Shown here: piece after piece, positions 1,723-30,216 of the stretch
Layout of the letters: the number at the start of each line of letters is the position of its first letter
Position numbering within the stretch: position 1 is the stretch's first letter
Source: Octopus bimaculoides
Lineage: Eukaryota
Direction of reading: 5' to 3'
Assembly (NCBI RefSeq): GCF_001194135.2
Contig: NC_068998.1
Location: 2,728,423-2,792,422 of the forward strand
Length of the DNA stretch: 64,000 nucleotides
The notes under the pieces: model-generated
What the model was told of the DNA's origin: nothing
What the model saw: the letters and a program-made list of their open reading frames with translations, nothing else
The model's database searches: none
Made by a program: the position numbers and the translations under genes

Positions 1723-30216
<28,494 letters not shown>

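What the first reader, a model, noticed from the sequence alone, without database searches (positions are those of the whole stretch)
20532..20540. Frame-preserving 9-nt microexon candidate in the SEC14 domain of the DBS/MCF2L-like GEF
Seen: in the middle of the 10-kb intron between exons 24478 and 14423, the minus strand reads ...ggtttttctctgacttctgcag|GAAATTGAG|gtaagtc. It has a consensus donor, a ~70-nt U-rich tract and no other AG for about 150 nt upstream. The flanking exons join in phase 2 (GC|G). Inclusion gives GCG AAA TTG AGG TTG, changing TIPA-LYE to TIPA-KLR-LYE with no stop. The skipped form aligns without a gap to human DBS as recalled (TSIPSLQDAGIGF), so inclusion would add a basic tripeptide between a helix and a strand of the lipid-binding domain. 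Knowledge: 3-27-nt neural microexons regulated by SRRM-family eMIC proteins are a bilaterian programme enriched in GTPase regulators, and annotation pipelines often miss them. Caveat: the only nearby UGC overlaps the 3' splice site itself. Inference: a possibly neuron-specific, unannotated isoform that tunes membrane or lipid targeting.
Basis: partly seen in the sequence, partly recalled or inferred. Interest (0 to 1): 0.75.

Follow-up and report, generated by a model that had tools for sequence, protein, structure and literature searches.

The report
Candidate 9-nt microexon in DBS gene
A 9-base stretch with unusually strong splice signals sits in a 10-kb intron of a mollusc DBS/MCF2L-like Rho-GEF gene; the same intron holds a real alternative microexon in echinoderms, so it is a credible candidate microexon, but no evidence was available that it is ever spliced in.

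Summary
On the minus strand, ...ttctctgacttctgcag|GAAATTGAG|gtaagtc lies at 20540-20532. It is 3.9 kb into the 10,054-nt phase-2 intron between exon A (24592-24478) and exon B (14423-14333) of a DBS/MCF2L-like GEF. Inclusion turns ..CTIPA-LYE.. into ..CTIPA-KLR-LYE.. with no stop codon.

The splice-site pair is rare. It is the only such pair in about 565 kb scanned, about 0.01 are expected per window, and both sites score above every constitutive exon of the gene.

New comparative evidence: the same phase-2 intron holds proven alternative microexons in echinoderms (27 nt in Asterias, 24 nt in Antedon; RefSeq isoforms with and without). An arthropod-type RNA-seq contig carries a 39-nt insert at the same junction. 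An AlphaFold model (pLDDT 90) puts the site in the connection between helix H3 and strand S3 of the Sec14 fold.

Against it: I could reach no cephalopod transcript or orthologous intron. The gastropod intron (740 nt) has no counterpart. The pyrimidine tract is a low-complexity array next to microsatellites. There is no good distal branch point.

Verdict: a credible but unproven microexon, with about a 50% chance of being real. Neural specificity and a lipid-targeting role remain speculation.

The parts
20532..20540 (-). Candidate 9-nt microexon GAAATTGAG. In phase 2 it adds Lys-Leu-Arg between Ala and Leu.
20541..20696 (-). 3' splice-site region: CAG acceptor (AG at 20542-20541), UGC at -5 to -3, UCUCU at -17 to -13, a T-rich tract of about 70 nt, and an AG-exclusion zone of about 154 nt. 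The only yUnAy branch-point match is CTGAC, with its A at -10.
   Evidence: The tract is a low-complexity (AAGAAAACAAA)n array on the + strand. PWM score 10.1 bits.
20525..20531 (-). 5' splice site GAG|GTAAGTC, near-perfect U1 complementarity.
   Evidence: PWM score 11.7 bits; one of only 7 sites this strong on both strands of the window.
24478..24592 (-). Exon A (115 nt): ..[39 protein letters not shown]. It ends in GC, and its donor is GTAAGT.
14424..24477 (-). Host intron, 10,054 nt, phase 2. Its position and phase are conserved in gastropod, annelids, echinoderms and a hemichordate.
14333..14423 (-). Exon B (91 nt): (A)[30 protein letters not shown].
30127..30216 (-). Upstream coding exon: ..[27 protein letters not shown](G). 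It has its own acceptor, so further 5' exons exist.
8616..8729 (-). Exon C: [38 protein letters not shown].
4075..4191 (-). Exon D: [39 protein letters not shown] (end of the Sec14 domain).
2869..3128 (-). Exon E: [16 protein letters not shown]...VVELE (start of the spectrin-like region). The donor AG|GTAGGA is read by eye.

Best explanation
The 9-mer is a genuine, alternatively included microexon of a cephalopod-type DBS/MCF2L-like RhoGEF. Proposed mechanism (inferred, not shown): U1 binds the near-perfect GAG|GUAAGU donor. U2AF and pyrimidine-tract factors bind the roughly 70-nt U-rich tract within a 154-nt AG-free zone. An SRRM-type (eMIC) activator bound at the UCUC...UGC element next to the AG allows a 9-nt exon to be defined, probably in neurons. 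Inclusion inserts Lys-Leu-Arg (+2 charge) into the ordered connection between helix H3 and the short helix and strand S3 of the Sec14 domain. The skipped form is the ancestral, gap-free architecture. What is shown: the sequence, frame, rarity and strength of the signals, the fold and the position of the insert, and that the homologous intron carries alternative microexons in other phyla. What is inferred: that the exon is used at all, its tissue specificity, its regulator and its effect.
For: (1) The splice-site pair is far stronger than chance would give. It is unique within 4 bits on both strands of the window, with 0.011 expected per window. It is the top candidate in the intron by 7 bits and unmatched in about 565 kb. 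Both sites score at or above those of constitutive exons A-D of the same gene. (2) Its length is a multiple of 3 and it has no stop in the required phase. (3) It has the architecture described for eMIC-dependent microexons: a long AG-exclusion zone, a long pyrimidine tract, UCUC then UGC close to the AG, and a strong 5' splice site (PMC8797185; bioRxiv 10.1101/2024.09.17.613571). (4) The same phase-2 intron holds bona fide alternative microexons in Asterias (27 nt...aacaTGCAG|CTATTTC..GCAAG|gtatag) and Antedon (24 nt), each with RefSeq isoforms with and without the exon. Holothuria also carries an insert, and an arthropod-type RNA-seq contig has a 39-nt insert at the same junction. (5) The insertion point is a helix-to-strand connection that tolerates 8-13 extra residues in those taxa. 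The Pfam CRAL_TRIO_2 score barely changes, 62.3 to 60.1 bits.
Against: I could obtain no transcript evidence and no cephalopod orthologous intron. The gastropod orthologue's intron is only 740 nt and has no plausible counterpart, so there is no conservation at mollusc level. The KLR insert shows no similarity to the echinoderm or arthropod inserts (YFKGSNHA, FLRNYEE, FRSQPPILNINYR). The pyrimidine tract is a low-complexity array flanked by (TA)n and (AC)n microsatellites, which is typical of unconstrained intron sequence. The only consensus branch point is at -10, too close to be usual. The proven echinoderm microexons score weakly on the same PWMs (sums 6.2 and 4.2), so high PWM scores are not what marks real microexons.
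Confidence: 0.5

Rival explanations
1. It is a chance pseudoexon. A low-complexity T-rich tract ending in CAG happens to lie 9 nt upstream of a GTAAGT. The site is not used, or is used only at noise level, and has no function.
For: The T-rich tract is a simple (AAGAAAACAAA)n-type array beside microsatellites. A similar T-rich tract ending in CTTCTGCAG occurs elsewhere in the window with unrelated flanks, so such 3' splice-site look-alikes arise from low complexity here. At about 0.09 per Mb per strand, a genome of a few Gb would hold hundreds of equally good pairs. There is no distal branch-point consensus, no counterpart in the gastropod, and no peptide similarity to inserts in other phyla.
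Against: For this intron, in frame and without a stop, only about 0.002-0.003 such pairs are expected. A chance site would also have to fall in the one intron that independently hosts microexons in echinoderms and an arthropod-type lineage. Both sites are stronger than the gene's real exons.
Confidence: 0.4
2. It is a real exon but not a neural, eMIC-regulated one. It could be constitutively or broadly included in this lineage, or be a low-level, young, lineage-specific exonisation without tissue regulation.
For: The PWM-strong acceptor and donor are more like a constitutive exon than the weak-acceptor architecture of the proven echinoderm microexons. There is no strong distal branch point of the kind reported for eMIC exons (PMC8797185). 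No tissue data exist.
Against: All 99 homologues aligned across the junction lack a 3-residue insert there. A 9-nt exon normally needs dedicated activators (literature). UCUC...UGC is present next to the AG.
Confidence: 0.08
3. It is a recursive-splicing (ratchet) site or RS-exon that helps remove the 10-kb intron stepwise and does not appear in the mature mRNA.
For: It has a long host intron, a strong acceptor close to a strong donor, and lies near mid-intron.
Against: Tested and not met. Recursive sites need AG|GT juxtaposed so that a 5' splice site is regenerated after the first step. Here, joining exon A to the acceptor gives GGC|GAAATT, which is not a donor. A 9-nt exon, once ligated, would stay in the mRNA.
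Confidence: 0.02

Closest known systems
Alternative microexon of echinoderm DBS-like genes (Asterias rubens/amurensis 27 nt, Antedon mediterranea 24 nt; RefSeq isoform sets, e.g. XP_033637408 versus XP_033637411, and XP_071951040 versus XP_071951042)
   Same: It is the same gene family and the same phase-2 intron between ..[IV]P[SA] and [LM].., and the same Sec14 helix-to-strand connection. It preserves the frame. In Asterias a UGC abuts the acceptor AG and there is a long pyrimidine tract.
   Different: The echinoderm exons are 24-27 nt rather than 9 nt. Their inserted peptides (YFKGSNHA, FLRNYEE) are unrelated to KLR. They have weak PWM splice sites and, in Asterias, a perfect distal TACTAAC branch site. 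Their use is supported by annotated isoforms, whereas the window's candidate has no expression evidence.
SRRM3/4 (eMIC)-dependent neural microexons of bilaterians
   Same: It is 3-27 nt long and symmetric in frame, has a strong 5' splice site, a long AG-exclusion zone, a long pyrimidine tract with UCUC and a UGC close to the 3' splice site, and lies in a surface connection of a signalling or GTPase-regulator protein (PMC8797185; bioRxiv 10.1101/2024.09.17.613571).
   Different: Neural inclusion and SRRM dependence are untested. There is no strong distal branch point. The acceptor is PWM-strong rather than weak. No conservation of the flanking intron has been demonstrated.
Intronic pseudoexons (decoy splice-site pairs in long introns)
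   Same: It sits deep in a 10-kb repeat-rich intron, its acceptor is built from low-complexity T-rich sequence, and there is no evidence of use.
   Different: The pair is far stronger than any other in about 565 kb scanned. It is in frame and lies in an intron with independent microexon use in other phyla.

Membership tests
DBS/MCF2L-type Dbl-family RhoGEF (SecSR subgroup) | N-terminal Sec14/CRAL_TRIO_2 domain of the SecSR type | tested here: met
   Pfam PF13716 at 1.3e-16. Kalirin Sec14 7UR2 matches by sequence at 8e-25 and by fold at TM 0.85.
DBS/MCF2L-type Dbl-family RhoGEF (SecSR subgroup) | Closest homologues are DBS/MCF2L rather than Trio/Kalirin or MCF2 | tested here: met
   The top hits are named 'guanine nucleotide exchange factor DBS(-like)' in gastropods, annelid, ticks, decapods, echinoderms and a hemichordate. 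The window protein has the D[KR]R.D.W motif of the DBS type, not DMRGSKW of Trio/Kalirin.
DBS/MCF2L-type Dbl-family RhoGEF (SecSR subgroup) | Spectrin repeats, then DH-PH (and SH3) downstream | not testable with these tools
   The window ends after the first spectrin-like exon, which gives only a weak spectrin match. Full-length homologues have Spectrin_5, RhoGEF, PH and SH3 domains.
eMIC (SRRM3/4)-dependent neural microexon | Length 3-27 nt, a multiple of 3, and an open frame | tested here: met
   9 nt; AKLR in phase; no stop.
eMIC (SRRM3/4)-dependent neural microexon | Long AG-exclusion zone, long pyrimidine tract with UCUC, UGC close to the 3' splice site | tested here: met
   The AG-exclusion zone is about 154 nt. 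Positions -80 to -3 are 77% pyrimidine. UCUCU lies at -17 to -13 and UGC at -5 to -3. The features are as listed in PMC8797185.
eMIC (SRRM3/4)-dependent neural microexon | Strong branch-point sequence upstream of the pyrimidine tract | tested here: not met
   The only yUnAy matches are CTGAC with its A at -10 and TTTAT at -142. The Asterias microexon, by contrast, has TACTAAC.
eMIC (SRRM3/4)-dependent neural microexon | Strong 5' splice site (mammalian-type microexons) | tested here: met
   GAG|GTAAGT scores 11.7 bits and is among the 7 best sites in 128 kb.
eMIC (SRRM3/4)-dependent neural microexon | Neural-enriched inclusion and dependence on an SRRM eMIC protein | not testable with these tools
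   No RNA-seq or transcript of this species or any cephalopod could be reached.
eMIC (SRRM3/4)-dependent neural microexon | Conservation of the exon and flanking intron in related species | tested here: inconclusive
   The gastropod intron has no counterpart. The annelid introns have only weak 9-nt candidates at chance level. Cephalopod orthologues were not available.
Recursive splice site / RS-exon | Acceptor AG directly followed by GT, so that a donor is regenerated after the first splicing step | tested here: not met
   The acceptor is followed by GAAATT, and exon A plus the acceptor gives GGC|GAAATT.
Transposon-derived exonisation (antisense retroposon poly-T as acceptor) | The candidate and its flanks belong to a dispersed repeat family | tested here: inconclusive
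   Only the T-rich tract plus CTTCTGCAG resembles another site in the window, and the flanks are unrelated. A genome-wide copy number could not be tested.

The most novel reading that the evidence does not exclude
The connection between helix H3 and strand S3 of the DBS Sec14 domain, encoded across an ancient phase-2 intron, is a bilaterian 'microexon slot'. Echinoderms fill it with 24-27 nt (possibly hemichordates too), an arthropod-type lineage fills it with 39 nt, and this cephalopod-type genome fills it with 9 nt. This would be either one ancestral, fast-evolving microexon or repeated independent exonisation at a structurally permissive site. In the mollusc the exon would be neuron-specific and eMIC-regulated, and would tune the membrane association or autoinhibition of a RhoGEF.
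Probability: 0.2. Interest if true: 0.6.

Novelty: new member of a known kind. Interest (0 to 1): 0.4.

Why it matters
If the exon is real, it would add a very short (3-residue, +2 charge) regulated insert to the Sec14 module of a Rho/Cdc42 GEF in a cephalopod-type nervous system. Together with the echinoderm and arthropod cases found here, it would show that one particular surface connection of this domain has been a target of small-exon splicing across phyla. That would give a concrete, testable case of conservation or convergence in microexon programmes, and a handle on what the little-understood SecSR Sec14 domain does. If it is a chance pseudoexon, it is an ordinary feature of a long, repeat-rich intron. 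It would then illustrate that splice-site strength alone does not identify microexons, since the proven echinoderm exons score poorly.

Tried and rejected
- **Word-indexed protein searches.** The A+B peptide found nothing. A six-sequence alignment returned only 4 proteins and missed members of its own query. The index is incomplete, so the absence of cephalopod proteins tells us nothing.
- **Exhaustive HMMER search.** It gave 518 homologues, none more than 58% identical, so no close (cephalopod) relative was available for isoform or intron comparison.
- **Metagenome scans.** The exact 23-mer core gave no match. An exon A/B peptide scan found two mollusc-like contigs at 61% identity with 1.1 kb of intron and nothing notable.
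- **Bivalve locus.** The gene was too long to fetch.
- **Structure of the KLR-containing form.** Only the skipped form was modelled.
- **Recursive splice site.** Rejected on sequence.
- **Dispersed-repeat or TE origin.** BLAST within the window shows only low-complexity similarity.
- **Non-coding RNA at the site.** There are no tRNA or Rfam hits anywhere in the window.
- **Other in-frame exons in the intron resembling the echinoderm inserts.** None was found.
- **Arthropod RefSeq isoform sets (Macrobrachium, Anastrepha).** They show no variation at this junction.
- **Literature.** No paper links MCF2L/DBS to a microexon. A 2026 bilaterian splicing preprint that includes Octopus bimaculoides does not mention the gene.
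- **PWM scans of other species' introns.** These cannot exclude microexons, because the true echinoderm exons rank only 10th and 20th in their own introns.

Full report
**The observation.**
- On the minus strand, 20560-20525 reads tttttctctgacttctgcag|GAAATTGAG|gtaagtc.
- Exon A ends ...ACCATTCCGGC|gtaagt at 24478. Exon B begins ...tttcag|GTTGTATGAAG at 14423.
- The two exons join as GC|G (Ala) in phase 2.
- The intron is 10,054 nt. The 9-mer lies 3,937 nt from exon A and 6,108 nt from exon B.
- Inclusion gives CTIPA-KLR-LYEVE and skipping gives CTIPA-LYEVE, with no stop.
- The nearest upstream AG is about 154 nt away. Positions -80 to -3 are 77% pyrimidine. UCUCU lies at -17 to -13 and the only UGC at -5 to -3.
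- Every factual element of the finding is therefore confirmed.

**The gene.**
- I rebuilt the minus-strand gene model from open-frame segments:
  - exon 0, about 30216-30127 ([28 protein letters not shown])
  - exon A, 24592-24478
  - exon B, 14423-14333
  - exon C, 8729-8616
  - exon D, 4191-4075
  - exon E, 3128 to about 2869
- The spliced peptide is a CRAL_TRIO_2 domain (Pfam, 1.3e-16).
- Its closest solved structure is the Sec14 domain of Kalirin (7UR2, 8e-25), which aligns without a gap across the A/B junction.
- An exhaustive HMMER search found 518 homologues. The nearest named ones are 'guanine nucleotide exchange factor DBS(-like)' proteins. They come from gastropods (Plakobranchus, Elysia), the annelid Owenia, ticks, decapods, echinoderms and a hemichordate. 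A bivalve hit (Sinanodonta) is unnamed but has the same Sec14-spectrin-RhoGEF-PH-SH3 domain set.
- The window protein carries the DBS-type ..D[KR]R.D.W.. motif rather than the Trio/Kalirin ..DMRGSKW.. motif.

**Is the signal more than chance?**
- With simple PWMs the acceptor scores 10.1 bits and the donor 11.7 bits.
- No other AG-(3-27 nt)-GT pair on either strand of the window comes within 4 bits of both scores.
- From the marginal site frequencies, 0.011 such pairs are expected per window on both strands, about 0.09 per Mb per strand.
- Within the intron the candidate's summed score (21.8) exceeds the next-best small exon in any frame (14.7) by 7 bits.
- Across about 565 kb (the window plus five other loci, both strands), only six frame-length pairs reach 15 bits and none but this one reaches about 21.8.
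- Both sites score at or above those of constitutive exons A-D of the same gene.
- At genome scale, chance would still produce hundreds of such pairs. For this intron, in the right frame and without a stop, the expectation is only a few per thousand.

**A caution from calibration.**
- The proven echinoderm microexons (see "Comparative evidence" below) score only 6.2 and 4.2 bits in total. They rank 20th and 10th within their own introns.
- PWM strength is therefore not what marks real microexons. PWM scans also cannot exclude microexons in other species' introns.

**Local context.**
- The candidate core is single-copy in the window.
- Its pyrimidine tract is a low-complexity (AAGAAAACAAA)n-type array on the + strand, next to (TA)n and (AC)n microsatellites.
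- A look-alike T-rich tract ending in CTTCTGCAG occurs at 37360-37421 (+), but the flanks are unrelated. I read this as low complexity rather than a repeat family.
- There is no tRNA or Rfam RNA in the window.
- The only consensus branch point is CTGAC with its A at -10, which is unusually close to the acceptor. No strong distal branch site exists.
- A recursive splice site is excluded, because the acceptor is followed by GAAATT and no donor would be regenerated.

**Comparative evidence.**
- Of the 99 homologues aligned across the junction, most are gap-free there and a handful carry insertions at or next to it.
- Within RefSeq isoform sets, echinoderm proteins differ exactly at the junction:
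  - Asterias rubens and A. amurensis: ..YLIRIPS|YFKGSNHAS|MLDMDKGF.. versus ..YLIRIPS|MLDMDKGF..
  - Antedon mediterranea: ..YLTRVPS|FLRNYEES|MIEADRGF.. versus ..YLTRVPS|MIEADRGF..
  - Holothuria carries a similar insert.
- The genomic loci show true microexons in the homologous phase-2 intron:
  - Asterias, 27 nt: ...tgTACTAACaccctttctcgtcttttgttttttt...ttttcttttctgtgaacaTGCAG|CTATTTCAAAGGCTCGAACCATGCAAG|gtatag
  - Antedon, 24 nt: ...catcgcag|CTTCCTTCGAAATTATGAGGAGAG|gtactt
- The Asterias acceptor has UGC abutting the AG, as the candidate does.
- A spliced RNA-seq contig (Logan SRR29905061, P0013) has a 39-nt insert (FRSQPPILNINYR) at the same junction. Its nearest named relatives are decapods and ticks.
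- The intron's position and phase are conserved in a gastropod, two annelids and a hemichordate. Amphioxus has lost the intron.
- The hemichordate's top in-frame candidate is a 24-nt exon (..ISKNEHQ..) that may be the counterpart of the echinoderm exon. This is unproven.
- The gastropod intron is only 740 nt and has no plausible candidate.
- The one 9-nt candidate in Capitella (...gaatTGCAG|TACTGCCAG|gtaatgt) is at a level expected about 0.07-0.1 times per intron.
- In sum, this junction is a proven site of small-exon splicing in other phyla. The window's 9-mer itself is not shown to be conserved, and its KLR peptide resembles none of the other inserts.

**Structure.**
- AlphaFold on a 27-sequence alignment gives a confident model of the skipped form: pLDDT 89.8, pTM 0.86. 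It matches Kalirin Sec14 at TM 0.85.
- The junction Ala66|Leu67 lies in the ordered connection between helix 51-62 and strand 74-79, just before a one-turn helix at 67-70.
- By the Kalirin alignment the junction corresponds to about Ser88|Glu89, just after the C-terminal end of helix H3.
- In Kalirin the lysolipid groove is lined by S2, the S2-H3 loop, the N-terminal part of H3, the end of S3, H5 and H6 (PMC9823006). None of the listed groove residues lies at the insertion point, so a direct effect on lipid binding is not indicated.
Pfam scores are nearly unchanged by the insert: 62.3 versus 60.1 bits.

**What could not be done.**
- No cephalopod protein, transcript or orthologous intron could be reached.
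- The word-indexed search is demonstrably incomplete.
- The exhaustive search returned nothing closer than 58% identity.
- The metagenome scans were uninformative.
- Inclusion, tissue specificity and regulator therefore remain untested.

**Weighing.**
- For a real exon:
  - a splice-site pair expected only a few times per thousand in this intron and frame
  - eMIC-like acceptor architecture, as described in PMC8797185 and bioRxiv 10.1101/2024.09.17.613571
  - its location in the one intron that independently hosts microexons elsewhere
  - a structurally permissive site
- Against a real exon:
  - a low-complexity origin for the acceptor
  - no distal branch point
  - no mollusc-level conservation and no peptide similarity to the other inserts
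  - the absence of any expression data
- I put the probability of a genuinely spliced exon at about 0.5. About 0.3 of that is for the specifically neural, eMIC-regulated version.
- A chance pseudoexon is at about 0.4, and other readings at about 0.1.

**Novelty.**
- If real, this is a new member of a known kind: a frame-preserving microexon in a GTPase regulator.
- The more interesting by-product is that the connection between helix H3 and strand S3 of the DBS Sec14 domain is a recurrent, or possibly ancient, microexon slot across phyla.

Noticed in passing
L002 26466-26492 (Asterias rubens); L003 15652-15675 (Antedon mediterranea): Alternative 27-nt and 24-nt microexons lie in the homologous phase-2 intron of echinoderm DBS-like genes. 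RefSeq isoforms exist with and without them. Asterias has a perfect distal TACTAAC branch site, a long pyrimidine tract and UGCAG| at the acceptor.
   Followed up: yes
L004 (Logan SRR29905061 contig, P0013): A spliced arthropod-type DBS transcript carries a 39-nt insert (TTCCGGTCGCAACCTCCTATTTTAAATATAAATTATAGG; FRSQPPILNINYR) at exactly the same junction. The organism was not identified; its nearest relatives are decapods and ticks at about 51% identity.
   Followed up: partly
L009 10481-10504 (Glandiceps talaboti, hemichordate): The top in-frame candidate in the homologous 10.4-kb intron is a 24-nt exon, ...cactgccag|TATATCAAAAAATGAACATCAAAA|gtaagcc (..ISKNEHQ..). It may be the unannotated counterpart of the echinoderm microexon.
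   Followed up: no
L006 2532-2540 (Capitella teleta); L005 21485-21493 (Owenia fusiformis): The annelid homologous introns contain in-frame 9-nt AG...GT candidates. Capitella has ...gaattgcag|TACTGCCAG|gtaatgt, again with UGCAG|. Owenia has ...cctatag|CTACTTGAG|gtaatta. Their scores are near chance level.
   Followed up: partly
L010 28265-28315 (Branchiostoma belcheri): Amphioxus DBS-like has lost this intron. The sequence is continuous across the junction (..ATCCCGAGCGCGGAGGAG..).
   Followed up: no
window 3391, 11347, 13926, 14204/14226, 39846, 45113 (mostly minus strand): A dispersed repeat has at least seven copies whose translation reads ..[17 protein letters not shown](I/L)STS... It is probably a SINE- or TE-like family, and one copy lies just downstream of exon B. 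Related '..[29 protein letters not shown]..' segments also recur (about 18154-17744 and elsewhere).
   Followed up: no
window 37360-37421 (+): A T-rich tract ending in ...gggatttcagctgcttctgcag resembles the candidate's pyrimidine tract and acceptor (78% over 63 nt), but the flanks are unrelated.
   Followed up: yes
window 19900-20048 versus 40589-40439 and 7623-7498: Another dispersed repeat of about 150 nt (78-79% identity) lies about 500 nt downstream of the candidate in the gene's orientation.
   Followed up: no
window 31440-31941, 39428-39528, 51361-51981, 57946-58056: There are four runs of N (assembly gaps), all outside the host intron. The window is 36% GC and rich in (TA)n, (CA)n and (CT)n microsatellites.
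   Followed up: no
tool behaviour: the search for homologous proteins missed proteins that share many 5-mers with the query, including members of its own query alignment. Negative results from it should not be read as absence.
   Followed up: yes
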